Below, piece by piece: positions 2,242 through 50,500 of a stretch of 64,000 nucleotides of DNA. Origin of the DNA: Macrostomum lignano (taxonomy: Eukaryota); contig NIVC01000099.1 of the NCBI GenBank assembly GCA_002269645.1, forward strand, positions 558,001 to 622,000. The letters run 5' to 3'. The notes beneath the pieces are model-generated. The model did no database searches. It was not told the origin of the DNA and worked only from the letters and a program-made list of their open reading frames with translations. The position numbers were made by a program, and so were the translations under genes. Positions within the stretch are counted from its first letter, which is position 1. Each line of letters opens with the position of its first letter.

Positions 2242-2245
2242 TTAA

Positions 2246-10530: not shown

Positions 10531-10667
10531 ATGATTTCTTTTTGCAATGCACTTCATTTGAGCAGTTTGTCTGTTGTCTTTTTGAAGGATTTTTGGCTGT
10601 CTTTTTGTTACTTTAGAAAACAGAGATTCTATCCAGATGTCCCCCATCGGGGGGCGAAGATTGCTAG

Positions 10668-17517: not shown

Positions 17518-20500
17518 GTGAGTAAAAGTTTCTAGTCGGCCACAAGCTAGGAACTTACTTATGATTAATAATTTCTTACCCTCAGCCTTCCACTAATTAT
17601 AATCTTCCTCAGACAAACATATTAGCGATTAGATTTTGAATAAATGAGTGATACATGTAGCTCTGTATAAATATATTTAGTAGTTGCAAGCAAGCTTAAA
17701 CAAAACAAGCAAGCAATATTGAATAATAGATGATAAATCATCGCGTTTTAATAACCCCCACGCAACCCCTTCAAAATGTCCACATCAACGGAATGCGCCG
17801 TTCCCAGGCTCGCGATTCTCGCCGATTCCCCGATTCTGGCCGATTTAGTTGAACCCCCGCCTAACATAAGACATTTACAAAACGCTTTAAAGAGGAAGCA
17901 GACATTTCGGGTGGCCTGCCCTCACCATTTAAAATGCCGTCATCAAGCACTTGTGGCTTTTTGTTTTGTAAGAGTAGTACAGTTGTCCAAAACTGCTACT
18001 CACCTCTCACTGAACTTTTGAGAGGATCGATGAGAGGATCGACTGTAGGGGTGAAGCAGCTCCACGACCCCTGGTTGGGTTCCGTTCGCAGCTACAATAA
18101 TTTAATTGGGGCTTGTGCACGAAAATTAGCCGGGGGTCGTCGTGCGATGCAAAACTATGAGAGCCGACCCCCAAGGCACAGAGTCGACATGCCAGACATA
18201 CTAGACATACTAGACTACTAGACATACTAGACATACTAGACATACTAGACATACTAGACATACTAGACATACTAGACATACTAGACATACTAGACATACT
18301 AGACATACTAGGTAGCAGACACCATGTGCTAACATAAGCTAGCAAATATAGCTAAGCCAGTTGGCATATAATAGAGAACATCACTTGAGAAGTTTTTCTG
18401 CCATTTCAAGTCAGTTATTATGCTACAAAGGTTTTACATTTGCATGCTTTCTTTCAGAAAACCTTTTCTGTTTTCTACGCCGATGCCAGCACTCCAAGTT
18501 TTGTGCCCTTGGAAGTGTCCATGGTAACCCAGCTGGCGCTCTTCGAAGTTGCGACATGCCAGACGGCCTGCGTCCTGCAGCTGGATTTGGTCGGGTATCC
18601 GAGTACTACAGGTAATGCTTTTGCTACCGGAAAGTTTGCTACAGCTTTTCAGAACAAAATTTTATGACTGCATCTAGAAATCATTTTTGTGTGATTAAAT
18701 CACTCACAGCCTGCCCCGGCATCCCGACTGCTGAGTACACTTCGTCGATTACCAAGACCGCCCAGGAGACGCTGGTGACGCTGAACTTCACTCGAATTTA
18801 CTACCTGACCAGCTTCGTACTGCGAGGTCTATCGGCTGAGCCAAACTTCTGGCTATCCTATCAGAAAGTGCTCGGAGAGCCAGCCGAGAATCTGACTCAC
18901 GCTTGGAACTCCAGCCTCTATCTGGTATGTTTCTGCTGCATTTTCCTAAAGATTGGGGCTTCGAAAGATTTGATGGTGGGGCTGAATAAGCGCGCGTGAC
19001 ATTAGAGCGCATGTGTCTCTTTTTGCTAGTTGGTACAGAAGCGCGCACTGGCATAAGCGCGCAGGCAATTTTACGGGTGAAACAGAAGCGCATGATGGAC
19101 CGATAAACGCGGGACAGTGCAGGTCTGCGCTGCTCCCGACAGGCCGACCGGCACTGACCCCAGAACCTCGACAGCACTGGCGATCTCAACCTCAGGCAAC
19201 AAAGGTGGGGCCAGAAGCTTCAGCAGCCACTGTGTTACTCTCTGGTCCAAAGGACTGCGGCTGATGAACGGCTGAAGACCACTGCATGTCAGACCACTGC
19301 ATGTCAGACCACTGCATGTCAGACCACTGCATGTCAGACCACTGCATGTCAGACCACTGCATGTCAGACCACTGCATGTCAGACCACTGCATGTCAGACC
19401 ACTGCATGTCAGACCACTGCATGTCAGACCACTGCATGTCAGACCACTGCATGTCAGACCACTGCATGTCAGACCACTGCATGTCAGACCACTGCATGTC
19501 AGACCACTGCATGTCAGACCACTGCATGTCAGACCACTGCATGTCAGACCACTGCATGTCAGACCACTGCATGTCAGACCACTGCATGTCAGACCACTGC
19601 ATGTCAGACCACTGCATGTCAGACCACTGCATGTCAGACCACTGCATGTCAGACCACTGCATGTCAGACCACTGCATGTCAGACCACTGCATGTCAGACC
19701 ACTGCATGTCAGACCACTGCATGTCAGACCACTGCATGTCAGACCACTGCATGTCAGACCACTGCATGTCAGACCACTGCATGTCAGACCACTGCATGTC
19801 AGACCACTGCATGTCAGACCACTGCATGTCAGACCACTGCATGTCAGACCACTGCATGTCAGACCACTGCATGTCAGACCACTGCATGTCAGACCACTGC
19901 ATGTCAGACCACTGCATGTCAGACCACTGCATGTCAGACCACTGCATGTCAGACCACTGCATGTCAGACCACTGCATGTCAGACCACTGCATGTCAGACC
20001 ACTGCTGACGACAGCCTGGCAGAAGTAAAACCAGCAGCCTCGGGCTTCGGCATAACCCTGCCAGCCAAAAAGTGGCACACTCGACGCACCCTATTGTTAG
20101 AAGTCCCCAACCACCCAGCGCTAACTGCACTGACTTGATGGGAGAGCTGAAAAAAGCGGTTGCTTCTTATTCTAACTTTAAGCTGCAGTATTCAGATACG
20201 CGCTTGTGTCACTGACAGCTGTTTATAAATGCGCGCTTGTGTCACTGACAGCTGTTTAAAAAATGCGCGCTTGTGTCACTGACAGCTGTTTATGAATGCG
20301 CGCTTGTGTCACTGACAGCTGTTTATAAATGTGCGCTTGTGTCACTGACAGCTGTTTATAAATGCGCGCTTGTGTCACTGAGAGCTGTTTATAAATGTGC
20401 GCTTGTGTCACTGACAGCTGTTTATAAATGTGCGCTTGTGTCACTGACAGCTGTTTATAAATGCGCGCTTGTGTCACTGACAGCTGTTTATGAATGCGCG

Positions 20501-23500
20501 CTTGTGTCACTGACAGCTGTTTATGAATGCGCGCTTGTGTCACTGACAGCTGTTTATAAATGCGCGCTTGTGTCACTGACAGCTGTTTATAAATGCACGC
20601 TTTTGTCACTGACAGCTGTTTATGAATGCGCGCTTGTCTCACTGACAGCTGTTTATGAATGCGCGCTTGTGTCACTGACAGCTGTTTATAAATGCGCGCT
20701 TCTGTCACTGACAGCTGTTTATAAATGCGCGCTTGTGTCACTGAGAGCTGTTTATAAATGCGCGCTTGTGTCACTGACAGCTGTTTATAAATCCGTGCTT
20801 CTGTCACTGACAGCTGTTTATAAATGTGCGCTTGTGTCACTGACAGCTGTTTATAAATGCGCGCTTGTGTCACTGAGAGCTGTTTATAAATGTGCGCTTG
20901 TGTCACTGACAGCTGTTTATAAATGCGCGCTTGTGTCACTGACAGCTGTTTATAAATGCGCGCTTGTGTCACTGACAGCTGTTTATGAATGCGCGCTTGT
21001 GTCACTGACAGCTGTTTATGAATGCGCGCTTGTGTCACTGACAGCTGTTTATAAATGCGCGCTTGTGTCACTGACAGCTGTTCATAAATGCACGCTTGTG
21101 TCACTGACAGCTGTTTATAAATGTGCGCTTGTGTCACTGACAGCTGTTTATAAATGTGCGCTTGTGTCACTGACAGCTGTTTATAAATACGCGCCTATGT
21201 CATGCTTCCCGCATTATATACATGTACCAATATACAAAACTTCCCCTAAGAAATGCACTTCAGTTCGATGTTTCACATTGCAAATACGCACTTTGTTCCA
21301 GTTTCCCGTCACTTACGCGGACGAACGCTTTGTCGTGCCGTTTATTCTAACACCCGTGCAGCTACAGATCCACCTGTCTCCGACATCGGCCGTGACTGGA
21401 ATTGACAGTCTGACTGGCTGCGCCATAGAGAGTAAGTTCAGAATTGACATGCCCTTTTTGCTGGGAGAGTACTGTTGAGCTTGCATCAATTATCTTTGCC
21501 TTCACGTTGCTAGTGAAACAATTTAACCCATGTAGCGTAATTAATCCGGTAGAATCCTCATCTCTAAACTATTCGTTGGATTTTTAGCCAGAAGCTAATG
21601 TCGGATAGGCTGATTGGTGGTGATTCCTAGGCCGGGGTCTTGCAGCCTAGTTGATGCTGCAAGCACTCACTCAAATCATGCATTGGCGCAGCCATGCAGC
21701 AGCAAGTGCTCTGCCAGCCGTCGATGGCACTGAATGGGGTCAGACCAGTTGCAGTTACTTAATTGCAAACGTATGAGTTGGGCCAAAGGTGCAAATTAAA
21801 CCAGGGGAGATTCAGTCACACGATTCATGCTGGCTAACTTTTTGTTCCGCACCTTCTTAAACAAGAATAAAGTCGCCAGCTTCCGGACCGTCGAGATATT
21901 CAACGATTCTGCCAGAAGGTCGGATTTTTCCCATAAGCGCTAGCGTATTCATTACACCCATACGCCCCAGTGCAGCCTTGCGAAGCCTTCAAATTTCATC
22001 AGCACGTTGACCACATGTGTCTGCATCAGCTCTGACTTCGTTGTACACTGGCCTTCACCCAGGCGGAGCATATGGACATTCAACAGGTGGCACCAGGTTA
22101 CTATGGACAACCCTGACGCGAATTTCGCTAGTTTCGCCGATCAAGCCTCGACAGTGGACAAACCTCAACTGCTGGACATACTCAGCTAGTCTCTCAAGCA
22201 TTCCGTTATCACTCCGACGCCGTTAGCATCTTCAGACCCCCCCCCCCTCGGTAGTTCTACGGGCGGAAAAATGGCCTTGTATTCCTTCCTATGGTCTGTG
22301 CCATAAGCGGCTGGCAGAGCACCTGCTGCTGCAGATCTGCACCAATGCATGATTAACCTCTACCCTCGCCTCCCTCTACCGTCCCAGAAGTGATGAACGG
22401 ACCACACCTCGAAAGCAAGTAACTGATATGGACTGTAGAATCCACTGGTCATATGCTAGCCTACCTGCCAGAGTTTTTAACTCAGCTACCTCACTGTACT
22501 CGTATCTGGAAGCAGTCGCAGAGGCCCCAGATTTTTCCACCAATTAATCCAAATTACTGTTGAGCTTTAGAGCAGAGCAACCCGATGGTTTTGCATACTG
22601 TATCTCCTAGGATCTGACACTGTCTATCAGAACTGCACGATTGCACATCGCTAGACTAGTAAATAAGCAATCAGATCAATACACCTATTTTCAACTTGTT
22701 TTCAGCCTGCCCGCCTGGCTGGATGCGGGGACTGACAGGCTTTTGCTGGCACCGAGAGGAGTCAGAAGTCGCTTGGTCAGAAGCTGATCAGTTCTGTACG
22801 TCTGGCCTCGCTTGGGGAGGCTGGCGTGGTCGGCTGCTGCTTGGCAAGACGGTGGTGGAGAGAAACATTCTGATGAACGGGTGAGCAAACGGGTGAAGCT
22901 TCACCAGCTGATCTCTGCTATTTAAAATTAAAAATACAGGTTTATAACTAGCTCGTATTAATGTTGTTTACAAGAACTCCGGACGCTATATCTGAACGGA
23001 TTTCGTGCATCAGGTGCATTTATTCTACTTGGAGAATACTGTTAGAAGGCCTACAAATATCCATATTCACGCATCCACCAGCTAGCAAAATCCAAAGGCC
23101 CAGACACCCAACATTCAAGAAAATAAGGCTTATTAAATATCAAAAGATTTAAAATCTTGGTCTCTATACACACCGCTAGCTTGTGTCGTCAGAAATGATC
23201 CAAACGCAAACTTCCGTTTGCAAACGCAGGACGTACCTTGACTGAGATGCTGCCCAAAGTATATAATAACCAAATCACTGGTTTAGGTTTACGCTCGTTT
23301 ATAAACTTTGGTGCTGTTCAAACGCTTGGTGTCTTGGCATTGTTTCACAGTGCCTTAATAGAAATGCATTCACAGATCACAGTTCTCGACTTTTGGTAGC
23401 TAAAAGCTTATTCGCATCGCCATCAAATAAGGCCAAATTTTGATTGCTCACACGACTAACACTTTACAGAGTGGTGAGAGAGCCAAGTACAAAAGCTTGG

Positions 23501-26500
23501 CCTACAAGGGTCTTGAGAGTCATTCTGCAGCAAGACGGAAAAAGCAAACATGTTATATTGTTAGGGCGTAGTTGGCATTCGTACTGCAACATCACTCCTT
23601 CAAAATCGGCTTAAGATCATTAGTAAAAAAGCTTCGCACAATTTTTCCTTCTTCACTATAAAAGCGCTACCATTGAGTCCTCATTCGGCACATACCACGT
23701 CGGACTTCGGCGCAATTCAACGACAAACAAGTGGCTCTGGAGTGACGGCACACAGCCGGAGGCGGGCACCTACTACATGGCCAGGCCGCCGCCCGACTGC
23801 GCCGCCTTGGACAGCAGCAAAGCTGCAGTTGTCACCGTGCCCTGCACATCAAAGCTGCACTTCATCTGCCAGCTTGATATGTACATGGGTATGTGTTAAT
23901 GAGGCCCAGGGTAATGCAGCTCGGTTTTTTAATGAACCAAGAAAAGGAGCAAATTCCGTACTATCGTTATCTCGCATCAAACTTCAGTGCTTTGCTTTAA
24001 GCTTCTTTCAAAACTCCGACACTCATATATCCAACACTTCATATCTCCGACACTTCATATCTTCGACACTTCATATCTTCGACACTTCATATCTCCGACA
24101 CTTCATATCTCCGACACTTCATATCTCCGACACTTCATATCTTCGACACTTCATATCTCCGACACTTCATATCTCCGACACTTCATATCTCCGACACTTC
24201 ATATCTCCGACACTTCATATCTCCGACACTTCATATCTCCGACACTTCATATCTCCGACACTTCATATCTCCGACACTTCATATCTCCGACACTTCATAT
24301 CTCCGACACTTCATATCTTCGACACTTCATATCTCCGACACTTCATATCTCCGACACTTCATATCTCCGACACTTCATATCTCCGACACTTCATATCTCC
24401 GACACTTCATATCTCCGACACTTCATATCTCCGACACTTCATATCTCCGACACTTCATATCTCCGACACTTCATATCTCCGACACTTCATATCTCCGACA
24501 CTTCATATCTCCGACACTTCATATCTCCGACACTTCATATCTTCGACACTTCATATCTCCGACACTTTATATCTCCGACACTTCATATCTCCGACACTTC
24601 ATATCTCCGACACTTCATATCTCCGACACTTCATATCTCCGACACTTTATATCTCCGACACTTCATATCTCCGACACTTCATATCTCCGACACTTCATAT
24701 CTCCGACACTTCATATCTTCGACACTTCATATCTCCGACACTTTATATCTCCGACACTTCATATCTCCGACACTTCATATCTCCGACACTTCATATCTCC
24801 GACACTTTATATCTCCGACACTTCATATCTCCGACACTTCATATCTTCGACACTTCATATCTCCGACACTTCATATCTCCGACACTTCATATCTCCGACA
24901 CTTCATATCTGAAACACATCCTCTTAACAGCAAATAAAAGGTGTAAAGATATCGTGTTACACCATAACAAATTAACGGGCTTTCAGATCACGTGACCGAT
25001 ACGCATGAAGTACTAATGGCCAAGCGCCACTTTTGTGGAGTCGGGGTAGAGGATGACGCAATCGCCCTAACTGGCTACAGCAATCTGCTAAGGCTGCTCA
25101 CACTGGACAGTTTAGTCACTGACCAGATTGAAACCACCACCAAGAATTCAGCGGCCTACTCGACCACGACTTCCACTGGCAGCTGCGAGTCGCTATTGGA
25201 CGTCTACTTCACTACCTACTACGTGTTCCCAATCCGGAAAGGTACGAAATTAGGGTATAACGACGTGTATACGTTTCAACATTTCTCTAGATACTCGTAT
25301 GCACCGGTGTTTCTTGCGAGCCAAACTATTTAACAATGCAGGTTGCGCTCTGCCGCTGTTTAACCAGAAGGACAGCCAGCTTGAGGTCCGGTTCGATGCG
25401 TCCAGCAGCAACTATCGGAGGCACGCCAACTATTCTGTGGTGGGCGCTACCCTTGCCTATGAAGGTTAGAGATTTATTTATTGTACTATGCTTTTCCATA
25501 AAGAATCATTGTCCTTAAAATTCAAATACGAGCGTACGTCGTTCAAGCGACTTCCATGCAGATTTTTGCTAAGAACAAACTGATCTTTACAACCATATCG
25601 AGTCACTTTCCCTAGTTAGAAATTTTAAACTTTTAAAACAAGGTGTTTTCAAGGATACCTGCAACATAGGTTGGGATACATTATTTTCGAAAAAAATATG
25701 TCCCCTGTCTTACCCTGTCTTAGGGGGTGCAGGCGGCCCCACCGGCTAAGCCACACAAAACAGCGCAAAGAGCCAATCAAAACCCAGCACGGGGCAGGGC
25801 GCAGCCTACGTGTCACAACAGGGCCTGTCGCAGCCAACCAGAGCAGAGAACGAGGCAGGGTGCACGGCCGAGGGGCACATCAAAGCCCAGCAGTCATGCA
25901 TGCCAACTCCCCATCCAGCCAGACCCTAAGCTAAGTGAACCATGCCCTGACTGACCGACAAGAGCACAGGGACTACAATAACTTTGGCAAATCTAGTAAC
26001 TGTTCAAGCCAAATAGTCTATGACCTCAAGAAATCAAACTCCGTCAGTCCCAGAATCCATCCAAATGTGTGCTAGGATGTACACATTAGCACACATTACT
26101 GTTTCTAACCCGAAGTTGGAAATTACCCGAACGTAAAGGAGATAACTAACCGATGGAATCGCTTCGAATCAGCTAAAAATCTCTTGTATGCCCTCTTTTT
26201 CCTAATTGCAAATATACGATCGATACCGGATTGGTTCGTAACTGCATTAAATTAGTTGTAAGCAACCTGTTACATTCAAGATCACCTGAAGTGCACCGTC
26301 ACCGGTGATGATTACGAGTTTTACGACTACGGAGTAACGATGACCCAGTCCGGTCGAGCCTGTCAGGCCTGGACTGGAACCTACGCTGCGTACAATCGCT
26401 CCTGCATCACAGGTGGGCCAATTGTCATGAATTAACAAATCGCTCAATTTTTTATACACTTCTACTTTTTATTACTCGTGATAGAATGCTTGCTGTGATT

Positions 26501-29500
26501 TCAGTTACGCCTAATTATGCGACGAAATGCCAGGCTCAAGGCTCGGGAACAACGGAGTATTGCCAGCCGGATATCGACAGTCTGCTGTGTGGTCAGTGAT
26601 ATTCAATATCCTATAATATATCATGGCCATGTATAAAAATAATTAATATAGTCACTCGTCAACAATTGCAGTTCCCAACTTTAAGCCACTTTCGGACTTA
26701 TATGGAACTGCGGAGTTCTCCATCACGTCACAGAAGGTGTTTTACTACAACGATGTCCGCATACCCAGCCCCACATTCAGCTTGGAAAAGGTTACGCTGA
26801 ACACAGGCTCTGTCGGCGTTGACAATCCTGCTCACTATTGGAGGCTCATTGCGGATCTGAAGTCTAGTCACCAGATTCTGTCTGGGGAAATTTACTTCAC
26901 TCTATGTGAGCGCTACTGGTGTAGCTCTTAATTTTCTTTTAATATGCTTGCCTTGTAGAGCTGTAGCCTAGGTGTTAGAGCGGCGGACAAACGACTTAAA
27001 GGTCGAGGGTGCGATTTCCGATCCCACTGGAACACTTTGTGTCCTTGAGCAAGACACTTAACTCTGCATTGCTTCAGTTCACCCAGCTGTAAAATGGGTG
27101 CCACCATTAGCTGGGGTAATTGAGGGTCGACTGAAGCGACCCCTCAGTCCTTGGACTGAACAGCCGTACACAGCCTTCAGATGCGCCGCGCAATAGCTGC
27201 GGCTGAGCTGTCGGTTGCACATCTGCCCATTAGGGTAGGTGTAATCAATTAAAAAAGCTTTAAAAACTCAGTGACAAGGCACCATAGGAAGCTTTAATTT
27301 GATATTCAAATAGCATTACGAGCGAAATATAAGCCCGTATAAATATAAAAAGAGTAATTGCTCAGGAGAAAATTCTCAAACTCAGAGTCGGAGCAATTGC
27401 TCAATCGTGAGAATATTCTCTGAGTCTGAGCAAGTGCTCATCGGGGGTATGAATAAAGAATAAACTCAAACTCTGAGAATATTCTCCGTAGCTTGAGTAA
27501 ATGATCAGAATGCTTTTGGCCACAGACAAAAATCGTTCATACGGCTTTTCGCCGTTAGTACGGCTTTTTACGGCTTCGTAGGGCTTCTTACTTACGACTG
27601 CTTTTTCTCTCGCTTCTCACTTTTGGGAGTTTACATGCGCTAAGCTTAAGTTCAGAAGCAAACATCTAGCTTTTTTGTTCCTTACGGAGACTTCCAGTCG
27701 TACGACTTCTTTGGGCCACGATGAACGGAAATGACGCCGAAGACGAGTTGTTCGTAAAAGTTGTCTCTCGCTACCCCGTCGTCCTCGACAAATTTAGTTT
27801 ATGGAAGTAGTTTTATTCTTATTGACCTGAGTAATTGCTCAATCTCAGAGTATTTGCTCATGAGCAATTTCTCAGTTTATTCATACAGGCCCGAGTCAAT
27901 GCTTGAGTTGGAGCAGTTGCTCATTTTATTCATATGGCCTATAATTTCACTGGTTTCAGCACTGAACAACTTCACTGTGAAAGTCAGCAGAGATTGGAAC
28001 TCCAGCCTCGGCGAGCTCGCATTCGAGGCCTGGCCCCTCTGCTACATCTACAACCTGCCGGAGCAAGCTTCATCACCGCTGAAGTTCTGGTGCGAGAGGC
28101 CCATTGCTGGTCGCTACGTGGCCTTTCTGCAGGGTTTGGCGATAGGAAAGCTTTCCATAACTACCCTGCAACTGCATGCGGAGGAAGGTTAGTCGGCTAA
28201 ATGTATACTAAAGTAATATTCAGCAAGTACTCAAATACATAAGAGGGAACGGAAGCCTTAACGATCTTTAATATCTGTAACCTGCAGAAAATTTTGAAGA
28301 AACCGGGACATACCCGTATCTGATTCGTCGAGTGCCAGCCAAAATAATGAGCTCTGATTCTGTGCAGCGAAACAACACGCTAAAAATGTTTGCCCGCTTA
28401 AGGAATTCCGGACTGAAGCTGTGGCTGACCAATCGGTACGAGCATGCCGATGTCCTCAACTCTGTAAGTCCATGGTGAAATCATGATGTTAGTAAAGCAA
28501 ATCCATCGACAACTTAATCACTCAGGACGGTAAACTCGAAAATCATGGCGAAAAAAATTAGAGGCTCGTTTAAAAGAATTGTTCTATGGCCAAGCATCAT
28601 ATACGAATATTGAAGGCTACACGCGAATGTAGCACGTAAATAAGTGCGAGAGAAGCGAAATAAGAGCCCCACTAGCCCCACTAGCCTTTCGGAAGCCAGG
28701 AGTGTGGGGGGCAATATTCACTATGCACTATGCAAATGTATATACAAAACGTGGCTCTTTCCTATACTGTTGGTCAAGTTTCTGATATTTGCTTTGTTTT
28801 CTTAATTTTTTACTAATGTTTTAATTGTTTAAGCAATCACAGTGCAATTTAATAAAAAGTGTATGATACTTACAAATTCTATAAGGCTTAGCCATAGAAC
28901 AACGCTTTAAAACGAGCCTCTAACTTTTTTCGCCATGATTTTCGAGTTTACCTTCCTTAGGGATTAAGTTGTCCTTGCGCAAATCTACAATTACAAACCC
29001 ATAATCAGTAGATAGCATATGCAGGTAAATAGGAGACCCCTATTGGCTTCCGCTATCGCCCTTTTTTTCAACGAAACAATATTTTAGTATCCTTACCATA
29101 AGCTGGCACTTTAGTTAGTTTTACTAGTATTACCCAGAAGCGTAAATTGAAAGCAGGTACGAAGTAATCTAAATATACTAAATCTTAATATTCTAAAATC
29201 GAACTTATTCATGCAGTTATATATCGCTAGTTCAATTAGTTTTGGTCATGAAATTTCTGATTTTAAATCTGTCGCATGTGCTTCAACGGTATGAAAACAT
29301 CCCATCTACTCGCAGCCTCGCTGGGAGATCTCCATCGGCGGCAACGGCACCGCCGCATTCCTCAGCGAGGCTGCGGTTCGCACTGGAGACTCATCCAGCC
29401 CGAGCACGCTGGCCTCCATGATTCTGACGGGCGCCAGCGGCTCAGTCGCTGCCACCACCGACGACTATCAAAGTCTGCAGCTGGTCTGGACGCAGCTGGG

Positions 29501-35500: not shown

Positions 35501-38500
35501 TGCACCGAAAATGACAATGCTTATCTTTTTAAAAGACCAGAAATCTGTCTTAGAAGCGCTGTAGGAGCGTTAAAAAGCTGATTTGCCAGCACAAATAGTA
35601 CTCAATACGTCATAGCACTCGTTCTTTTGTACCCTAAATGCATTAGTGAAGGGGAGGCAAAGACAAGACAAACCGAGTGTGGCGATGGCGAGGCAGCGAA
35701 AAGCCAGAGGATGCAACCCTCAGACGATCGTATTTATTTCATGACTTGTTAAAACGAATTAAACTGATTAAAAATTATAATTAGCGAGGAAAAAAAATTC
35801 AACCGCGAGCAACCCCGCGCAGCCACAAAGGTGGCGGCCTAAATAGGCACGCGCACGCACCAACGCACCCACCACCCCACCAGACAGCCAGCACCCAAAC
35901 AGCCCCCCCCCCTTGCACTAACAGCGGTTAGCCCTCGCGGGCTCGCGCAAACCGATGCATTAGTGAAGGGGAGGCAAAGACAAGACAAACCGAGTGTGGC
36001 GATGGCGAGGCAGCGAAAAGCCAGAGGATGCAACCCCAAGGCCAAACAAACAAATGAATTAACGAAGGAGAGAATTTACGAAACGGCGGAAATAAGGCTG
36101 GGGATAAGAACGGAAATAAAACTTTGAACACAAGCAAAAGTTACTCAAAGGCAACTCTCGTTAAAAGCACCAGCAAAACGCGAACCAGCCCGCACAGAAT
36201 CAGCAGATGGAAGGTAGGCAGTCACAGCATCACTTCGCCAGTCACCGATGCACTTCACCTCCTGAACAGATAGTCTGAGACGGTAGGCCCAGGTGGCACC
36301 ACCTCTGCGCAGGCTGTGCGCTGAGAAAGAACGAGCGTCCTGCTCAGCAGTTGCTAGGCAGCGCTTGAGGAACCTGTCGAATCTTGAGGCAGACAGGACA
36401 ACAGAGGATCCGCTCGCCAACTGGTAGGAGAACACAGGCTGCCTGCAGCCAAGCTTGCTGACACGGAGGTGACCCTCTAGCGCAGCCACTGGGCAAAGCG
36501 GATGTCATTCTTTTAGCCTTGGAAGCAACACCCGGTGCAGCTTCGCGCCGAACTGATTCGTCTTGCCATAACTGACAGAGAGCACAACCCCCTTCGGGTG
36601 GCGTTGAAAGGCTGAGACGGAAATCGGTGAAGCGGACTGCTGACTGGGCAGGAGACTGGAGCGCCGAAACATCCCCCACCAAGCAATAAGCGTCACAAGC
36701 CAGCAGACTCTGTCAAGCGAACTGCTCGAGTTAAGCCGGTTTTTCACAGACAGCAGCATCGCAGGCGAGATCGGCAGCTTCCGTCTTGGTCGCTGGCCCA
36801 TCCTCCGTTTCGCGCCGCGAACGAGCAGTGAGACCAGGTGGTGTTTTGTTAGGTCCTCAGCACCACAGGCTTTGAACCAGCTGGACAGTGCACTGACATG
36901 GACACGCAGACTGTTGAACGATCTCAGGCGGCATTCGACCAGGTGAGCCAGGTAGTTGAGTAGCACCGACCGGTCAGATCGAGCCGGGTTGGTCCCGTTC
37001 TCGTTGCAGAAGCTGTGCCAGGACCGGACGGCCGATGAGATCGCCCTGCGTGACTGCGGTGCGTATGCTGCGGCGAGGAGGCTGGAGGCGGCGGCGCCGA
37101 GGGTCGGCGTTGCAGGGAGGCGGCCTGTGAAAATAAAAAACGGGAGGCAAAAACAGAAAACGCGTGATCCGAAAACTCCACAGGGCAAACTGGTACAGAC
37201 CCGTAAACACGGAAAATAAAATTAAGCAACTCATGACGCGAGTGCAGGCGGGACCCTGCATCAGCAAACAGCTGATAAGCACCAGGAACGTGAAAGACCT
37301 CAAATTCAATGTCAAAACGCAGACAGAGCAACGCCACAGACTGCAGCAACCACATCAGACGCGAGTCCTTGGAGACACCTCGCCTTAGAATCCAACACGC
37401 CGTCTCATTGTCGCAGTACACAGCAAGCCGACAACCAGCCAAGGATTGGCCCCATCTCAAAACAGCCAGCAATATAACCACAGCCTCCTTGTAATTGATG
37501 CAGTAATTCTGAAAAACACCATTTGCGTCGATCTGCCAGTCAATAAAGCACCAATCACGAATCCCATCACCGTCACGGAGCACCGCCGCGGCGCCTGAAG
37601 ACGACGAGTCAGTCTCTATGGCAACACAAGCCCTCGGCGAAGTCCACAGGCCAACACCGATGCGATGCTGCAAAGCCAACCGCCACCAGGAGAGGTGGTG
37701 CACCACGGAGGGACTAACAAGAACCCTGTCATGAGGCCGATGCAGCTTGTTAACAATGTCGATAAGAGGTCGGAGGAAAACTCTCCCGTGCCGAACAACT
37801 TGCGACGCCCAGTTTAACTTGCCGATCAACTTCTGCAAACACGACTTTGACAGCCTTTTCTTCGAAGAGCAGAGGGATAAAACATGCAACAAGTCTTGGA
37901 CTTTTTCGGCAGGAAGAGACATCTGGCCTGCCACGCTATCAAATAAAATGCCCAGAAAGGTCATCCGCGTTGTCGGCGGAACACACTTGCTACGGTTAAC
38001 GGTGAAGCCTAGCCGCTCGAGCAGATCGATGAGATGGTTGTAGAACTTCCAGCAGGACTCCAGATCTCCACAAAAGGCGAAGTCATCCATGTAGGCCTCC
38101 ATAGCGTAGAAACCATGCTTCAACATCATAAAACGCACAGCTTGGCTCAGCTCGTAAAAGCAGAAGACGGAAGCCGAAGCACCAAACGGGAGCCGCGTGT
38201 CGTACAGGTACACTGGCTGGCCCTCGCCTTGGAGCTGAATCTTCATGCCTGTGACCCGGTGGTCATCAGGGTGCACACCACATGAACGATATGCTTGCGA
38301 CAGATCCACTTTGCACATGTACGCGCCGCTGTACAGCTTCGAGGCAAAGTTGCTGGCCGAAGTAAAACGCAACTTCCGTTTCGACTCAAAGAAATCATTC
38401 ACAGAGGCGCCAGTTGGCAGGCTGCAGTCGTGAATAAGGCGGATGGAAGACGAATCCGCCTTAGGGATCGCACCAAGTGCACTAACGATGAGCGGCCGGT

Positions 38501-41500
38501 TGCCTGCCTGGCAGCGCCTGTAGCGGTCCTGCTTGAGCTCCTGGCGCACCTGGGCCTCAACAGCTTGCTGGTGAATGGTAGCTGATCTGTGATTTGCCAT
38601 CTCAGTGTGGTTCTTACAATCCATCACTTTATTAGTAATTCGAAAGCCATTCTTCACACCATCGAGCACGAACCTGACACGGTCCTCCGGCATCTCGGTC
38701 CCAGCCAGCTCTTCCCGCCAAACCGCAAACACAAGGTCGCTCGACAACTCAGTTGAACTCGGGTCACATAGGGGGAGCTCCCCCGTGGGGGCACAGGAGG
38801 GCGACCCGACGGCAGACATTGAGTCCTGTGCCCCCACCTCGCACGCTAGTTTTTTGAAAATTGGCCCGGGTCCCCATCAGCGTGGGCTCGGGCTTCAGAG
38901 TGCGGCTGTGAGCACCTGCGGCACTGATGGGCGAAGCGGCAGTGAGTTCTGTTGCAGCCGCTAAGACTGTTGAAGTCGAAACAGACAGGTGGCTGCGTTC
39001 GCTTTTTAGGCGCTGTTGCGTTTATCATTTTTGTTGGTGCCATCAAGTGTGTTGCCACCAGACCCAGGTCTGCGCTAACAGCGCTCCACCGCGTTCCATC
39101 ATGCTGGAGAAGCCGACATTCGTCATCATATCTCATGACTTTAGTGCGATCGAAGCCTAAATCTAGCAGGTCACCAATTCTAGCGTTATGTCGGAGATGA
39201 TCGATCAACTCGGATGAATCGATTCTGCCATCAACAATGCGCAGCAGTTTGCCATCACGCAGCATTTGCACCAGTAAGTTACAGCTACCGGAGATGAAAT
39301 CGCCAAACGACAGTGACTCGGGACTGACGTGTCTCAACCTCTCTGGCCTTGCCGCTCCCACAACAGACTGGCTTCCTTGTCTCCGCTTACGCTCACTGAT
39401 AAAATCAACGACTCTGTACACCGCCGGCGCCTGAGCATGCGAAGTTGCAGCCCCAGCCTGCCCGAGTATACACTCGCCAACCAAATCATGCCACTCACCG
39501 GGAGTCTGATCACGTTCTCTCGCAGCCGCCGTGCCACTGTGACGCGCTTCAGCGAGCTCGGCTTCGAGCTGAGCCTCTCTTTTTTCCAGGTCCAGCAGCC
39601 GAATGCGCAGTTCAGTCTCTCGCAGCTGATCCTCGAGACCGCCTCCCGTCGCCGCCCGACCCTCGGCCGAGGCGCCCACCGCCGGTAGCATCTCGTCCTC
39701 AGGTGGAGCCAGACTTAGCTCGGGTGCGCCCGCATTCGTCGGTGATGTCTTGTCATCTTGAGCACGACGAGATGAGCCTCTGTCCTGCTCCAACGCCTGC
39801 CGCTCAAGCTCCTTGGCAATGCTGAGTTTTAGACGACTTGTTAGCTCTTGCTTATTGCCATTAGTAGGCAGGCCGCGCTCACTAAGGGCTTCTCGTAGCG
39901 CTTTGTTAGTTGCGGGCAGTACAAGGCTATCTGCCATGATTCAGCAAAAAAAAATTCAACCGTGAGCAACCCCGCGCAGCCACAAAGGTGGCGGCCTAAA
40001 TAGGCACGCGCACGCACCAACGCACCCACCACCCCACCAGACAGCCAGCACCCAAACAGCCCCCCTGCACTAACAGCGGTTAGCCCTCGCGGGCTCGCGC
40101 AAACCGATGCATTAGCTAACATGTACAAAGCATATCAGCAGCCAGACCATTGTTATGAGTTGGACCACTACTAACGATTCACCCCAATGTCTACATGCTG
40201 TGAATCCACAGGGTTGACTACCTGATTCACGTGGGAATTGTGAGAAGCGGTTCCGTCTGGCAGTGGCTCGACGGCACCCCAGTGCCCAGCAGCCACTGGA
40301 AGCTGGGCCAGCCGGGAGATGTCTATGGCCTGTGGAGCACCAGTCAGGCAGCGCTGGTGGCAGCGGCTGATGGTGAAAAGCAAATGTTCGCGTGTCAACT
40401 GGCGCAGGCGCAGCAAGGGTCCGGTACGAAAACCCAATGCAAGCATGATATTTTACCTTTCATCTTTAGCCACATTGAGCTATCAATACAAACTTGCTCT
40501 ATATGGCTTATATATGTTTATAGTTACTATTATAATTATTTAGCTCTTAAACTTGATGAAATTTTACTCAGGCAATAGTCGAACGCTGCAGTTGGGTCAC
40601 GTAGCATTTGCCGATGAAAGACCGAGTTACGGAGGAAGTTTCACGTCGGCCTGCGTAGCCCACGGAAGCCCGAGCACCAGCCGGTCCAAACAGCTGCTGT
40701 ACAATCGGCTGCACTTGATGGATGAGTCTCTTGGCCGATTTAGCATCAGCCACACGCAGAGCAGCTCGACCGCAATCTTTGCCTGCAGCGTCACCAGCGA
40801 CCTGCTCAGCGGAAATGCCGACTCAAGCATCCGATCCGTCTCTGTTGTCACAGCAAATAAAGGTTCATCAGGGTGTTGTTCTTGCAAGTGTTTTTATAGA
40901 AAACATATAAAAATATTTTTTTCCAGACTGCTTGAAACCCCTGCTTGGCCAAGACGGTTTAGCTCAGACGTCCAGCTTCCCATTCTCGGCTTCGTACTTC
41001 GATGCCGAAAGCTCTCATTTGGGAAGTGGAATGCGGCTGAGAGGTACGTTTCACTCGAGAACTTAGAATTTGACAAGAAATTTATGATGTGCAATAAAAA
41101 GAGTAATTTCGAGTCAGTTTTATGGAACGTTTTACAAGTACCATTGCAACAATGCGCACTTTGTCCAAAAACAGCCAACTGCCTGATAGCCCAAGGTGAC
41201 AAGGAAAACTACGTCTACCCAGTGAACGTCACAGCCTACGGTCGCGTGTGTCTGAGTACAGCCTCTACAGGAAATAAGAGAGACTATAAGAACTACTGTA
41301 TAAGTAGTGAGTAGAGTCTGTTGATTATTGTGGTTTTATCTAACCACTGTTGAAGGTACCTGACAACGGATCTTCAAAAATGGCAAGAAAAATTTTACTC
41401 TTTGCAGCAACGTTGACGGAAGCGCCATTTTGTTACGTCGACGTGTCCAACACGAAACAAAGTTGCATACTGCACAATTGTTGTAAGGATAATCTTTCTC

Positions 41501-47500: not shown

Positions 47501-50500
47501 ACCAACTCGCTACAAGCCTACTCAGTGTACGGAGCGCTGGGACTCAGCACTGTGAGTTTTATTGCTCATTGCCCTCGAATCTTGCCAATTTTTAAACATG
47601 TGTTATAATATGCTTAGTGCAAATTGGTGTTCAAATACAATGAAGTTTATAAAATAATTCATTTGTTTGCAGACCATCGGCACAGGTCTGACAGACAGCA
47701 TCACACCCCATCGAATGTCACTCAGCAGCCCTTTTCTGGCTAAGGTTGTTCGGCTGTTGCCGAAGGCCTCCAAGAATCTACGGTTGCTTCGGTTTGAGCT
47801 TCTTGGCTATCCGGAAGGTGAGTGAGGCTGTTAAACTCAATAACCTATCAAGTGCTCATAAATCTGTTTCCCATTTGCTAGCTTTTATCCCGAGCTGTGC
47901 ACAGAATTATCGCATTAAAATTTAGACTGTAACTGGCTGGACTCATCAGAGGCAACAGTCAGTGCTGTGTCTTCCAACTCTGCTCAAATACTGCTATCCA
48001 GTCCTCACGTTGTGACGGGTTGGAGGCTTACCGGCGGCTCGGGAAATGCCACATTCAGCTTGAGCTTCATCAGCTTGCGAAATGGAAGTCTTCAGACCGT
48101 GAGAAGCGGTGATGCACCAAACGTAATCAAAGCTCGCTATCTATTGCATTCAGTTTCATACCTTATTGGCTCAATTTAATCTATAAGCGTTTTAAATGCT
48201 CCAGGTGTTCAACTGCAGTCTGGGCAGCGAGCAGTACCTCCCGCTGGCTGTGTACACCACAAAACTGTTCATCAATTTCTCAGACCCAGCTCAGCTAAGC
48301 ACTGCAATCTCGCTTCGCGGCTGTCGAATGGCAGGTAGGAAAACTAGTAGCTAGCTCCCACGCATACCCCGTTAATCCGAAGTGCATGGAGTACGCTCGT
48401 ACATGACTGTCTAAACAACTCACAGGGCGCTGCAACGCTCATATGCGACGTATCAAGTATCAATAAATGCTAATTCGAAATTATATCAAAATTTAAGAAC
48501 TCTGCGAAAACAAATATTTTAGCAAAAACCTGTTTAATAACAGCATTTTCTGGTAGAAATTTAAAAACATTTTGAAAATTAGGTTGCAATTATATTTTTT
48601 GCTAGCTTTGCTGCAGATCAGCTAGCTATACAAGCATGTCTCATGCAGATCAGCTAGATATGCATGCATGTCTCATGCAGATCAGCTAGATATACATTCA
48701 TGTCTCATGCAGATCAGCTAGCTATACATTCATGTCTCATGCAGATCAGCTAGCTATACATTCATGTCTCATGCAGATCAGCTAGATATGCATGCATGTC
48801 TCATGCAGATCAGCTAGATATACATTCATGTCTCATGCAGATCAGCTAGCTATACATTCATGTCTCATGCAGATCAGCTAGCTATACAAGCATGTCTCAT
48901 GCAGATCAGCTAGCTATACATTCATGTCTCATGCAGATCAGCTAGCTATACATTCATGTCTATACATGCAGATCAGCTAGATATACAAGCATGTCTCATG
49001 CAGATCAGCTAGCTATACATTCATGTCTCATGCAGATCAGCTAGCTATACATTCATGTCTATACATGCAGATCAGCTAGATATACAAGCATGTCTCATGC
49101 AGATCAGCTAGATATACAAGCATGTCTCATGCAGATCAGCTAGATATACATGCATGTCTCATGCAGATCAGCTAGATATGCATGCATGTCTCATGCAGAT
49201 CAGCTAGATATACAAGCATGTCTCATGCAGATCAGCTAGATATACAAGCATGTCTCATGCAGATCAGCTAGATATGCATGCATGTCTCATGCAGATCAGC
49301 TAGATATGCATGCATGTCTCATGCAGATCAGCTAGATATGCATGCATGTCTCATGCAGATCAGCTAGATATGCATGCATGTCTCATGCAGATCAGCTAGA
49401 TATGCATGCATGTCTCATGCAGATCAGCTAGATATACATGCATGTCTCATGCAGATCAGCTAGCTATACATTCATGTCTATACATGCAGATCAGCTAGCT
49501 ATACATTCATGTCTCATGCAGATCAGCTAGATATGCATGCATGTCTCATGCAGATCAGCTAGATATGCATGCATGTCTCATGCAGATCAGCTAGATATGC
49601 ATGCATGTCTCATGCAGATCAGCTAGATATGCATGCATGTCTCATGCAGATCAGCTAGATATACATGCATGTCTCATGCAGATCAGCTAGCTATACATTC
49701 ATGTCTATACATGCAGATCAGCTAGATATGCATGTCCGTGATACATGCATGTCTATTTTCCAACTTCTCTACCTGAGGTCAGCACAGGGATTCTCACATA
49801 GCCACTCGGCGAGTAGATTGGTTTGTTTATTATAACGCGAGTTGACAATGCGTGGGAGTAATTTCTGCCTCAATTTTCTGCGTACTACAACAAAAATGAG
49901 CCTTCCATCGCCTTACAAATGTTTCACAGAATGCCCGACAAATTCGCTACGCCACGGCCGCTTCTGTTACTGGGCGCCGTTTTCGGACAGCAACCGGCCG
50001 CACACGGTGGCAAACAGGCGGGTGGCTCAGAGCATCTGCCAGTCCGCCAGCTGGCTGGGCGCAGGTCAGCTGGCGCGCATGACAACCGAGACCGAGCTGC
50101 AGCTTTTCAGCTTCATTTTTAGGCAGCTGCAAAATAGGTTTGTAAATACGAACACTTTCAAACTGGCGTGCATGACTTTTTGATGTTACCTGTACATGGC
50201 GATATAATTTGTACTTGCGATCGCTTCAGGTCAGGGTCGGTTCGCATCAATCGATAAGCAAACATCAGAGCAAACTGGATAGACCTCCAAACCCCAATAT
50301 GTGAAATTATTAGCCAGGAGGTCGAAGGGTGTTAAGTAACAGGAGGGCGTAGCCAGGACTTTTCAATTAAAGGGCCTGTTTCTATCTTTGTCAAGCGCCA
50401 GCATCCCTGGGGACTGCGTAATGCGGCAAATAAAAATTTTTATCGCAGCTTTTGTCGAATCCATCGATTCGTGCCAGCCATTGGAAAAGGTAATCTATAT

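What the first reader, a model, noticed from the sequence alone, without database searches (positions are those of the whole stretch)
38757..38857. Retrovirus-like -1 ribosomal frameshift signal with a predicted three-stem pseudoknot in a Ngaro element
Seen on the minus strand: gag ends TCA AAA AAC TAG, placing the heptamer A_AAA_AAC (38855-38849) in gag phase immediately before the stop. The RT ORF is exactly in the -1 frame and open from this site (L-A-C-E-V-G-A-Q). Eleven nt downstream is a perfect 14-bp stem, GTGGGGGCACAGGA/TCCTGTGCCCCCAC (38837-38824 with 38798-38785). Its loop carries TCGGGTCG (38809-38802), complementary to downstream TGACCCGA (38766-38759). A GGGGG-AGCT-CCCCC hairpin (38784-38771) lies between them. 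Known: A_AAA_AAC is the MMTV gag-pro type slippery site, and downstream pseudoknots stimulate -1 frameshifting. Inference: a Gag-RT fusion is made by programmed frameshifting. I do not know whether this architecture is described for tyrosine-recombinase retrotransposons. Caveat: the 11-nt spacer is longer than the usual 5-9 nt.
Basis: partly seen in the sequence, partly recalled or inferred. Interest (0 to 1): 0.85.

Follow-up and report, generated by a model that had tools for sequence, protein, structure and literature searches.

The report
Frameshift signal in Ngaro retrotransposon
A tyrosine-recombinase (Ngaro-type) retrotransposon, probably in the flatworm Macrostomum lignano, carries a classic "slippery seven plus RNA knot" signal that lets ribosomes slip from gag into the reverse-transcriptase frame; the mechanism is ordinary for retroelements, but I found no earlier description of it for this element class.

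Summary
On the minus strand, gag (39937-38846) ends TCA AAA AAC TAG, which puts A_AAA_AAC (38855-38849) in gag phase. The RT/RNase H frame is -1 and is open only from 38876. A perfect 14-bp stem lies 11 nt downstream; it is the longest perfect hairpin stem in the 64 kb.

Split direct repeats (A1-ORFs-B1-A2-B2), RT/RH and a tyrosine recombinase, with no methyltransferase, mark the element as Ngaro-type.

- **Heptamer:** relatives with only 35-70% protein identity keep the same in-phase heptamer at the gag end (26 loci; Fisher p=4e-22). It is often directly followed by the stop. "K-N" is the commonest C-terminus among 150 gag homologues.
- **Stem 1:** it recurs at the same position, with partly different sequence, in four lineages.
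- **Stem 2:** loop-to-downstream pairing is at chance level in the window alone (p about 0.24). It recurs in all four lineages (combined p=1e-4).
- **Stem 3:** it is specific to the window and unsupported.

Sister lineages instead have an in-frame UGA-CUAG-type stop, a +1 arrangement or a fused ORF.

Verdict: a real programmed -1 frameshift cassette. It is a new member of a known kind, of moderate interest.

The parts
35638..40115 (-). Whole Ngaro-type element (A1 - gag - RT/RH - YR - B1 - A2 - B2), about 4.5 kb
   Evidence: Self-BLAST found split direct repeats.
39947..40115 (-). Repeat A1 (5' end of the element)
   Evidence: 96.6% identical to A2 over 174 aligned positions.
38846..39937 (-). 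gag ORF, 363 aa, intact. It has an N-terminal SAP domain and C-terminal Cys/His motifs, and ends K-N-stop.
   Evidence: There are 543 homologues in the representative library.
38849..38855 (-). Slippery heptamer A_AAA_AAC in gag phase, followed directly by the gag stop TAG (38848-38846)
   Evidence: It is conserved in phase in relatives.
38838..38848 (-). 11-nt spacer, which includes the gag stop codon. It leaves 8 nt between the stop and stem 1.
   Evidence: L086 has the same 11-nt spacing and L085 is in the same register.
38785..38837 (-). Stem 1: a 14-bp perfect G+C-rich helix (38837-38824 with 38798-38785) closing a 25-nt loop (38823-38799)
   Evidence: Equivalent stems occur at the same position in L001, L086 and L087.
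38759..38809 (-). Candidate pseudoknot stem 2: the 3' part of the loop (38809-38801) pairs with 38767-38759 (9 bp, one G-U)
   Evidence: Chance-level in the window alone. The same geometry is seen in L001, L086 and L087; Fisher combined p=1.3e-4 on duplex energy.
38771..38784 (-). Candidate stem 3: a GGGGG-AGCT-CCCCC hairpin between stem 1 and the 3' arm of stem 2
   Evidence: Present in the MFE and centroid folds. Not present in relatives, whose connecting loops are 7-14 nt single-stranded.
36924..38876 (-). pol frame (-1 relative to gag), open throughout, with RVT_1 and RT_RNaseH domains. The conserved W-x-x-E-L motif starts at 38720.
36145..37188 (-). Tyrosine-recombinase gene. It overlaps the end of pol in another frame and is broken once, by one in-frame stop.
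   Evidence: tblastn of P0068 aligns in one frame at 99.4%.
35955..36036 (-). Repeat B1
   Evidence: 100% identical to B2 over 82 bp.
35790..35963 (-). Repeat A2
35638..35719 (-). Repeat B2 (3' end of the element)

Best explanation
The element is a Ngaro-type tyrosine-recombinase retrotransposon. Its full-length RNA is translated into Gag, which terminates at UAG 38848-38846.

A minority of ribosomes slip back one base on A_AAA_AAC (38855-38849). They continue in the -1 frame from CUA (38849-38847) and make a Gag-RT/RNase H fusion. The slip is promoted by a very stable 14-bp hairpin that starts 11 nt after the heptamer, which is 8 nt after the stop codon. The 3' part of the hairpin loop probably pairs with sequence downstream, giving an H-type pseudoknot.

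- **Shown:** the sequence anatomy; conservation of the heptamer, its phase and its place at the gag end across deeply diverged relatives; recurrence of stem 1 and of the loop-downstream pairing in sister lineages.
- **Inferred:** that slippage actually occurs, its efficiency, and that the structure is the stimulator.
- **Open:** whether the shift is the tandem P/A-site slip, or a P-site slip of the Asn tRNA with the stop codon waiting in the A site. The conserved adjacent stop and the 8-nt distance from the stop to stem 1 are what raise the second possibility.
For: 1. **Anatomy.** The -1 frame is open only from 38876, so any frame change must happen within 31 nt, and these hold one canonical heptamer.
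2. **Heptamer strength.** A_AAA_AAC is among the most shift-prone heptamers for eukaryotic ribosomes (review PMC5009743).
3. **Conservation of the heptamer.** Of 34 related loci with pol in -1, 21 carry A_AAA_AAC in gag phase inside the overlap. Three others carry T_TTA_AAC, G_GGA_AAC or A_AAA_AAT. The count is 20/899 in-phase positions in overlaps against 1/11253 elsewhere in gag, Fisher p=4e-22.
4. **Heptamer plus adjacent stop.** All gag relatives of the window's own clade that have a -1 junction end A AAA AAC + stop: L001/L084, L085, L086, L087, L088, L089. Of 150 gag homologues, each under 50% identical to the others, 21 end in K-N. This is the commonest C-terminus, and 12 of the 16 listed (the first 13 new homologues plus P0001, P0077 and P0078) have it.
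5. **Pol cannot start on its own.** 11 of 17 scorable loci have no ATG in the pol frame before the conserved W-x-x-E-L motif.
6. **Stem 1.** It is the longest perfect hairpin stem in 64 kb. Shuffle p values in six lineages combine to 1.3e-7. In four lineages the stem sits at +12/+17 to +24/+26 with loops of 19-25 nt. RNAalifold on a sequence-only alignment recovers it, with 4 pairs changed on both sides.
7. **RNA rather than protein constraint.** The pol-frame peptide encoded by this stretch is not alignable between WIN, L001 and L086. The frameshifting lineages have a linker 38-43 codons long, against 14-31 in other heptamer-bearing loci.
8. **Stem 2.** Combined p=1.3e-4 (energy) and 0.011 (helix length). 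In WIN, L001 and L086 its 5' arm ends 1-3 nt before the 3' arm of stem 1; in L087 a bulged 11-bp pairing abuts that arm.
Against: - No expression, ribosome or protein data were available, so frameshifting itself is unmeasured.
- The 11-nt spacer lies outside the usual 5-9 nt (PMC5009743).
- Whole-segment folding energies are not significantly better than shuffles (z -1.6 to -2.0).
- Across the 24 more distant heptamer loci there is no general excess of downstream structure.
- Stem 2 is at chance level in the window alone. The strongest combined statistic for it ('last 12 nt of the loop') was chosen after seeing the data.
- Stem 3 is not conserved. If it forms, only 3-4 free nucleotides remain to span a 14-bp stem 1, which may be sterically tight (my inference).
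- The window copy has a pol-frame ATG (38819-38817) upstream of the conserved motif, so independent initiation is not excluded for this copy alone.
- No near-identical sister copy with DNA was available for true covariation analysis.
Confidence: 0.85

Rival explanations
1. Splicing rather than recoding. A 158-nt GT..AG intron (38915..38758) removes the end of gag, the heptamer and the whole structure, and joins gag to pol in frame. The UniProt gene model A0A1I8G0Z6 (P0068) is built this way.
For: P0068 is a Macrostomum lignano model 97-99% identical to the window. It joins gag residue ~345 directly to the pol frame. GT and AG dinucleotides are present at the implied borders.
Against: - The same model also skips all of RT/RH and joins into the recombinase. 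This looks like a gene predictor bridging frames.
- The donor GT lies inside the codons of the invariant C-R-R-C motif, so coding explains it.
- The intron would delete gag residues that are invariant in the family (P345, H346, E348, H352).
- The acceptor has no pyrimidine tract.
- Splicing does not explain why A_AAA_AAC in gag phase is conserved in 26 loci, or why K-N is the commonest gag C-terminus.
- Sister lineages with an in-frame stop need no intron at all.
Confidence: 0.05
2. Pol is made separately from Gag, by initiation, leaky scanning or reinitiation at the pol-frame AUG 38819-38817 inside the stem-1 loop. The heptamer and stem would then be irrelevant or serve another role.
For: The window copy has one ATG in the pol frame between the heptamer and the conserved pol motif, and so does L001. 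Prokaryote-style gene callers start the pol proteins at such ATGs.
Against: - 11 of 17 scorable relatives have no ATG at all in the pol frame upstream of the conserved W-x-x-E-L motif.
- The position of the ATG is not conserved between WIN, L001 and L086.
- A scanning ribosome would have to pass the whole 363-codon gag ORF.
- This model explains neither the conserved heptamer phase nor the K-N-stop ending.
Confidence: 0.04
3. Transcriptional slippage. RNA polymerase adds an extra A in the run of six A's, so a subset of mRNAs encodes gag and pol in one frame.
For: The heptamer contains a run of six A's. Polymerase slippage on A runs is a known route to -1-frame products (review PMC5009743, from its title and scope; details are my own knowledge).
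Against: - The conserved unit is the phased heptamer ending in C, not simply an A run.
- Relatives use T_TTA_AAC and G_GGA_AAC, which lack a long homopolymer.
- The site is fixed in gag phase (20 in phase in overlaps against 1 elsewhere).
- A strong downstream structure at a conserved distance is the hallmark of ribosomal, not transcriptional, slippage.
- Six A's is short for efficient polymerase slippage (my own knowledge).
Confidence: 0.04
4. Nothing is programmed. The window holds a decaying copy in which gag and pol fell out of frame by mutation, and the hairpin is a chance feature of a G+C-rich region.
For: The copy is not pristine. The recombinase gene carries one in-frame stop and repeats A1/A2 differ (96.6%). 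Whole-segment folding z-scores are weak.
Against: - gag (363 codons) and pol (637 codons) are both fully open.
- The same frame arrangement, heptamer and adjacent stop occur in independent lineages down to about 35% identity.
- The 14-bp stem is unique in 64 kb.
Confidence: 0.02

Closest known systems
gag-pol (gag-pro) programmed -1 frameshift cassettes of retroviruses and LTR retrotransposons
   Same: - An X_XXY_YYZ heptamer in gag phase at the end of gag, with pol in -1 and a short overlap.
- A stable structure a few nucleotides downstream.
- The presumed purpose is a fixed low ratio of Gag-Pol to Gag.
- A_AAA_AAC is listed among the most shift-prone heptamers in retroviral and coronaviral contexts. 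A 2003 survey found pol in -1 in 28 of 51 animal LTR elements (PMC5009743).
   Different: - The host element is a tyrosine-recombinase retrotransposon with split direct repeats, and Pfam detects no protease or DDE integrase.
- The spacer is 11 nt rather than 5-9.
- In this clade the gag stop follows the heptamer directly.
- Stem 1 is unusually long (14 bp).
- No Rfam frameshift element matches.
I had that site in mind, but no named hit came back.
Long-stem-1 and three-stemmed frameshift pseudoknots of coronaviruses
   Same: The proposed topology matches: stem 1, then the stem-2 5' arm in the stem-1 loop, then a third hairpin between the stem-1 3' arm and the stem-2 3' arm. Stem 1 spans more than one helical turn. 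Three-stemmed pseudoknots are documented frameshift stimulators (PMC11262651).
   Different: - There is no sequence or covariance-model similarity.
- The first loop is 11-14 nt rather than very short.
- Stem 3 exists only in the window lineage and is unsupported.
- The relatives have plain H-type geometry with connecting loops of 7-14 nt.
Stop-codon readthrough between gag and pol (gammaretrovirus type) and the UGA-CUAG readthrough context
   Same: - Sister lineages of this element have gag and pol in one frame separated by one stop: L082 and L090 with TGA CTAG G, and L083 with TGA CTC G.
- In 20 such loci the stop is TGA in 15, TAG in 5 and TAA in none, and C follows 12 of the 15 TGA.
- UGA followed by CUAG gives efficient readthrough in mammalian genes (PMC4132726).
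   Different: The window itself does not use this route. Its pol is in -1 and cannot be reached by readthrough. No strong downstream structure was seen in L082 or L083.
Ngaro elements as described in the literature (Goodwin and Poulter 2004 and later surveys)
   Same: Gag, RT/RH and YR genes in that order, no methyltransferase, and split direct repeats A1...B1-A2-B2. This matches the descriptions in PMC9210276 and PMC7192593.
   Different: The literature I could read notes at most that ORFs overlap (PMC9210276), or says that Ngaro ORFs usually do not overlap (PMC3266345). No held paper links Ngaro, DIRS or tyrosine-recombinase elements with a slippery site, pseudoknot, readthrough or recoding. 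The founding paper is not held, so prior mention there cannot be excluded.

Membership tests
Programmed -1 ribosomal frameshift cassette | Canonical X_XXY_YYZ heptamer in the phase of the upstream ORF | tested here: met
   A_AAA_AAC at 38855-38849 in gag phase. It is the only AAAAAAC on the element's sense strand.
Programmed -1 ribosomal frameshift cassette | Downstream ORF in the -1 frame, open across the site, with a short overlap | tested here: met
   The pol frame is open from 38876 and gag stops at 38846, giving a 31-nt overlap.
Programmed -1 ribosomal frameshift cassette | Stable 3' RNA structure at the usual 5-9 nt from the heptamer | tested here: inconclusive
   The structure is present and exceptional (14 bp), but the spacer is 11 nt. 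The review notes a minority of stimulators at 12-15 nt and says spacer variety is under-appreciated. The spacing is shared with L086 and L085.
Programmed -1 ribosomal frameshift cassette | Shift site and phase conserved among diverged relatives | tested here: met
   26 loci carry the in-phase heptamer at the gag end. Fisher p=4e-22. K-N is the commonest gag C-terminus.
Programmed -1 ribosomal frameshift cassette | Observed transframe product or -1-frame ribosome footprints | not testable with these tools
   No expression, ribosome-profiling or proteomic data are accessible here.
H-type / three-stem frameshift pseudoknot | Stem 1 downstream of the shift site | tested here: met
H-type / three-stem frameshift pseudoknot | Stem 2 between the stem-1 loop and downstream sequence, beyond chance | tested here: inconclusive
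   In the window alone p is about 0.24 (energy) and 0.08 (helix). Across four lineages Fisher p=1.3e-4 (energy) and 0.011 (helix), with concordant geometry. There is no probing or true covariation.
H-type / three-stem frameshift pseudoknot | Third stem in the connecting loop, conserved | tested here: not met
   The hairpin 38784-38771 folds in the window. L001, L086 and L087 have single-stranded connecting loops of 7-14 nt.
H-type / three-stem frameshift pseudoknot | Similarity to a curated frameshift-element RNA family | tested here: not met
   No Rfam match at E up to 1 anywhere in the element.
Ngaro (tyrosine-recombinase retrotransposon, DIRS order) | Reverse transcriptase plus RNase H | tested here: met
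   RVT_1 (37.6 bits) and RT_RNaseH (27.3 bits), both above the Pfam cut-offs.
Ngaro (tyrosine-recombinase retrotransposon, DIRS order) | Tyrosine recombinase instead of DDE integrase | tested here: met
   Phage_integrase hit at 21.2 bits, below the 27.1 cut-off, E 2.6e-4, with an H-x-x-R motif in the ORF. No integrase or protease domain was found. The support is of moderate strength.
Ngaro (tyrosine-recombinase retrotransposon, DIRS order) | Split direct repeats A1 ... B1-A2-B2 | tested here: met
   A1/A2 are 96.6% identical over 174 bp and B1/B2 100% over 82 bp, in the expected order.
Ngaro (tyrosine-recombinase retrotransposon, DIRS order) | No methyltransferase domain (distinguishes Ngaro from DIRS1-like and PAT-like elements) | tested here: met
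   There is no such Pfam hit. Pol ends about 140 residues after the RNase H match, and the last about 90 of these overlap the recombinase gene.
Ngaro (tyrosine-recombinase retrotransposon, DIRS order) | RT/YR phylogenetic placement with reference Ngaro elements | not testable with these tools
   No named reference Ngaro proteins came back from any search. The relatives are unnamed metagenome or genome proteins.

The most novel reading that the evidence does not exclude
Ngaro-type elements as a group may use an old, conserved recoding module. In it A_AAA_AAC is followed directly by the gag stop, and a long stem or pseudoknot sits 8 nt after the stop (11 nt after the heptamer). The slip would then be coupled to slow termination: a P-site slip with the stop codon in the A site, rather than the textbook tandem slip. 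Closely related lineages have repeatedly swapped this module for UGA-CUAG-type readthrough, +1 arrangements or fused ORFs. That would make the family a natural series for studying how retroelements switch recoding strategy.
Probability: 0.25. Interest if true: 0.6.

Novelty: new member of a known kind. Interest (0 to 1): 0.45.

Why it matters
- **Extends a known strategy.** Gag-pol frameshifting of retroviruses and LTR retrotransposons would also apply to tyrosine-recombinase retrotransposons. How pol is expressed in that order has been left vague: "ORFs overlap" or "usually do not overlap".
- **Improves annotation.** The only public protein model of this element (UniProt A0A1I8G0Z6) bridges the frames with invented introns and loses RT/RH. 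Prokaryote-style gene callers start pol at arbitrary ATGs. Recognising the cassette, with the gag C-terminus K-N-stop as a simple marker, would correct such models.
- **Offers a comparative series.** Sister lineages with -1 frameshift, UGA-C readthrough, +1 and fused gag-pol junctions allow study of the evolution of recoding signals and of an unusually long, conserved spacer.

Tried and rejected
- **Exact look-up of the window's Gag:** not on record.
- **First Gag homology search:** one hit only. It missed P0068 and the gags of L082/L083, apparently swamped by low-complexity words. Repeating it with the C-terminal half found P0077 and P0078.
- **Other collections:** scans of viral contigs and genome contigs with the Gag alignment found nothing.
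- **Covariation in close copies:** no DNA of near-identical sister copies could be obtained. L085 (70% Gag identity) keeps 11/11 bases of the stem-1 5' arm, but the contig ends before the 3' arm.
- **Whole-segment MFE z-scores:** uninformative in this G+C-rich context. I replaced them with tests on the longest perfect stem and on loop-downstream duplexes.
- **Two-layer pseudoknot heuristic:** on 25 loci it showed no general signal (mean z -0.07 against +0.13 in controls). I therefore do not claim a stimulatory structure for the distant relatives.
- **RNAalifold on four sequences:** it recovers stem 1, but the covariation term is about zero because the 3' arms misalign. I give it little weight.
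- **Rfam and tRNA scans:** no family matched and there is no tRNA in or near the element.
- **Literature:** no paper in the held library links Ngaro, DIRS or tyrosine-recombinase elements with a slippery site, pseudoknot, readthrough or recoding. Goodwin and Poulter 2004 is not held.
- **Lower stem:** pairing the spacer with the region of the stem-2 3' arm adds only about 0.5 kcal/mol, so I rejected it.
Full report
**Observation.**
- Reading the minus strand with the ORF lists and translations confirms every coordinate of the finding.
- gag (39937-38846, 363 aa) ends TCA AAA AAC TAG, so A_AAA_AAC (38855-38849) is in gag phase and the stop follows at once.
- The RT/RNase H frame is -1 and is open only from 38876. 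A frame change must therefore occur within 31 nt, and this stretch holds a single canonical heptamer.
- AAAAAAC occurs once on the element's sense strand.
- Eleven nucleotides downstream lies the perfect 14-bp stem 38837-38824/38798-38785. The GGGGG-AGCT-CCCCC hairpin follows (38784-38771).
- A loop segment is complementary to downstream sequence. It extends to 9 bp, 38809-38801 with 38767-38759, with one G-U.

**What the element is.**
- Self-comparison shows split direct repeats in the order A1 (40115-39947), ORFs, B1 (36036-35955), A2 (35963-35790), B2 (35719-35638).
- Pfam finds a SAP domain in Gag, RVT_1 and RT_RNaseH in Pol, and a weak Phage_integrase match with an H-x-x-R motif in the third gene. 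It finds no methyltransferase, protease or integrase.
- This is the Ngaro architecture as described in PMC9210276 and PMC7192593.
- A UniProt protein of Macrostomum lignano (A0A1I8G0Z6 = P0068) is 97-99% identical to pieces of all three genes. The window is therefore probably from that flatworm.
- gag and pol are open. The recombinase gene has one in-frame stop. A1/A2 are 96.6% identical and B1/B2 100%.

**Relatives and the heptamer.**
- A pol alignment retrieved 80 metagenome loci at 33-39% identity. Protein look-ups added closer ones.
- Junction classes among 85 sequences:

| Junction type | Loci |
|---|---|
| pol in -1 | 34 |
| single in-frame stop | 20 |
| pol in +1 | 8 |
| fused, no stop | 7 |
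| unclear or truncated | 16 |

- In a set of 34 loci with pol in -1 (33 of that class, L084 left out as a duplicate of L001, plus L018, whose gag is truncated), 21 carry A_AAA_AAC in gag phase inside the overlap, 0-36 nt before the gag stop. Three more carry T_TTA_AAC, G_GGA_AAC or A_AAA_AAT.
- The heptamer occupies 20 of 899 in-phase positions in overlaps, against 1 of 11253 elsewhere in the same gag ORFs (Fisher p=4e-22).
- In the window's own Gag clade, every lineage with a -1 junction ends A AAA AAC + stop: L001/L084, L085, L086, L087, L088, L089.
- A profile search of 1.84 billion representative proteins found 543 Gag homologues. Of the best 150, 21 end in K-N, the commonest C-terminus (the next has 6), and 12 of the 16 listed (the first 13 new homologues plus P0001, P0077 and P0078) have it.
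- A_AAA_AAC is among the most shift-prone heptamers for eukaryotic ribosomes (PMC5009743).

**Pol cannot generally start on its own.** A conserved pol-frame motif, W-x-x-E-L, lies 14-43 codons after the heptamer (38720 in the window). In 11 of 17 scorable heptamer loci there is no ATG in the pol frame between its upstream stop and that motif. The window has one, at 38819-38817, so this argument rests on the family and not on this copy.

**Stem 1.**
- The 14-bp stem is the longest perfect inverted repeat with a loop of 60 nt or less in the whole 64 kb, where only three reach 12 bp. It was never matched in 1000 dinucleotide shuffles.
- L001, L086 and L087 have stems of 9-13+ bp whose apical ends fall at +24 to +26 and whose loops are 19-25 nt. 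L088 and L089 have smaller G+C-rich hairpins at +10 and +8.
- The six shuffle p-values combine to 1.3e-7.
- L085 keeps 11/11 bases of the window's 5' arm in the same register, but the contig ends there.
- RNAalifold on a sequence-only alignment recovers stem 1, with four pairs changed on both sides, though the covariation term is about zero.
- The peptide encoded by this stretch is not conserved. The frameshifting lineages of this clade have linkers of 38-43 codons, against 14-31 in other heptamer loci. This points to selection on the RNA.
- Whole-segment energies are not significant because the region is about 70% G+C.
- The 24 more distant heptamer loci show no general excess of structure.

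**Stems 2 and 3.**
- In the window alone the loop-downstream pairing is unremarkable: 24% of shuffles match its energy, and 19% of other tiles of the element do as well.
- The same kind of pairing appears in the other large-loop lineages. L086 has 9 perfect pairs and L001 has 7. L087 has 11 with a 4-nt bulge.
- In WIN, L001 and L086 the 5' arm sits in the last part of the loop, 1-3 nt before the 3' arm of stem 1. In L087 the bulged 11-bp pairing abuts that arm.
- Combined p is 1.3e-4 for energy and 0.011 for helix length. It is 1.3e-5 for a statistic restricted to the last 12 loop nucleotides, which I chose after seeing the data.
- I therefore regard an H-type pseudoknot as likely but unproven.
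- Stem 3 occurs only in the window. If it forms, it leaves only 3-4 free nucleotides to span stem 1, which may be tight (my inference).

**Spacer.** Eleven nucleotides is outside the usual 5-9. The review notes a minority of stimulators at 12-15 nt and an under-appreciated variety of spacers. L086 has the same spacing and L085 is in the same register. Counted from the adjacent stop codon, the distance is 8 nt. That leaves open a slip with the stop codon in the A site (my inference).

**Rivals.**
- **Splicing.** P0068 joins gag to pol across a GT..AG interval 38915..38758. The same model also skips RT/RH. Its donor lies in the codons of the invariant C-R-R-C motif. Its acceptor lacks a pyrimidine tract. 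It would remove invariant Gag residues.
- **Internal initiation.** The no-ATG count argues against it.
- **Transcriptional slippage.** The conserved phased heptamer ending in C, the heptamers without a homopolymer run in relatives, and the conserved structure at a fixed distance all argue against it.
- **Mutational decay.** Open ORFs and deep conservation argue against it.

**Known or new.**
- No Rfam family matches.
- In the held literature, Ngaro and DIRS papers mention at most overlapping ORFs (PMC9210276), or say that Ngaro ORFs usually do not overlap (PMC3266345).
- The 2016 frameshifting review does not mention tyrosine-recombinase elements in the text held.
- No paper combines these elements with slippery sites, pseudoknots, readthrough or recoding.
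- The founding Ngaro paper is not held, so prior mention there cannot be excluded.
- The mechanism itself is textbook for retroelements, hence 'new member of a known kind'.

**Sister strategies.**
- L082 and L090 have TGA CTAG G and L083 has TGA CTC G between gag and pol in one frame.
- Among 20 such loci the stop is TGA in 15, TAG in 5 and TAA in none, and C follows 12 of the 15 TGA.
- UGA-CUAG is a documented efficient readthrough context (PMC4132726).
- The family thus seems to switch between recoding modes.

**Verdict.** The frameshift interpretation is well supported by comparison, though unmeasured. Stem 1 is solid, stem 2 probable and stem 3 unsupported. Interest is moderate.

Noticed in passing
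L082:1533-1545, L083:1107-1119, L090:919-931; 20 loci listed: The closest pol relatives (about 50% identity) have gag and pol in the same frame, separated by one stop in a readthrough-type context (TGA CTAG G or TGA CTC G). Among 20 such loci the stop is TGA in 15, TAG in 5 and TAA in none, and C follows 12 of the 15 TGA. No strong downstream structure was seen in L082 or L083.
   Followed up: partly
L009, L012, L027, L048, L052, L053, L057, L071 (pol in +1); L013, L022, L028, L038, L040, L059, L066 (no stop): Other relatives have a long gag ORF with pol in the +1 frame, or gag and pol fused in one ORF. The family therefore shows all four known gag-pol arrangements.
   Followed up: no
L004/L005/L006 (gag end about 1714-1726 in L004) and L031/L033/L042/L045: Two families with pol in -1 lack a canonical heptamer. 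Both have C_CCC_CAA in gag phase 3-6 nt before the gag stop. This may be a non-canonical shift site and is unexplained.
   Followed up: no
window 37125-37175 (minus strand): A long pyrimidine tract ending CAG|G lies just before the conserved part of the recombinase gene, inside the end of pol. The UniProt model uses it as a splice acceptor. It could be a real cis- or spliced-leader acceptor for a separate recombinase mRNA.
   Followed up: partly
P0068 (UniProt A0A1I8G0Z6) against window 36148-39928: The public gene model is a chimera: Gag residues 1-345, about 95 residues of the pol N-terminus, and the recombinase. The joins are two inferred introns, and RT/RNase H is dropped. It is probably a prediction artefact caused by the frameshift.
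   Followed up: partly
window 36145-37188 (-) and the repeats at 39947-40115 / 35790-35963: The recombinase gene of this copy is broken once, by one in-frame stop. gag and pol are open. A1 and A2 differ (96.6% over 174 positions, including an indel) while B1 and B2 are identical.
   Followed up: partly
window 38846-39937 (-): Gag combines an N-terminal SAP domain with conserved C-terminal Cys/His motifs: C-x8-C-x4-C-x3-H, then C-x2-C-x3-H-x5-H. 543 homologues exist in the representative library.
   Followed up: partly
window 449-15247, 19276-20005, 20199-21202, 24014-24910, 48612-49734: The element sits in very repeat-rich DNA. There are large arrays of 23-nt, 18-nt, 15-nt (48.7 perfect copies), 33-nt, 16-nt and 32-nt units. 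The other long 'ORFs' of the window (19071-21478, 23673-24995) lie within these arrays and are probably artefacts.
   Followed up: no
window 29311-29375: This is the second-longest perfect hairpin stem of the window: 13 bp, 77% G+C, with a 39-nt loop. It lies outside any recognised element.
   Followed up: no
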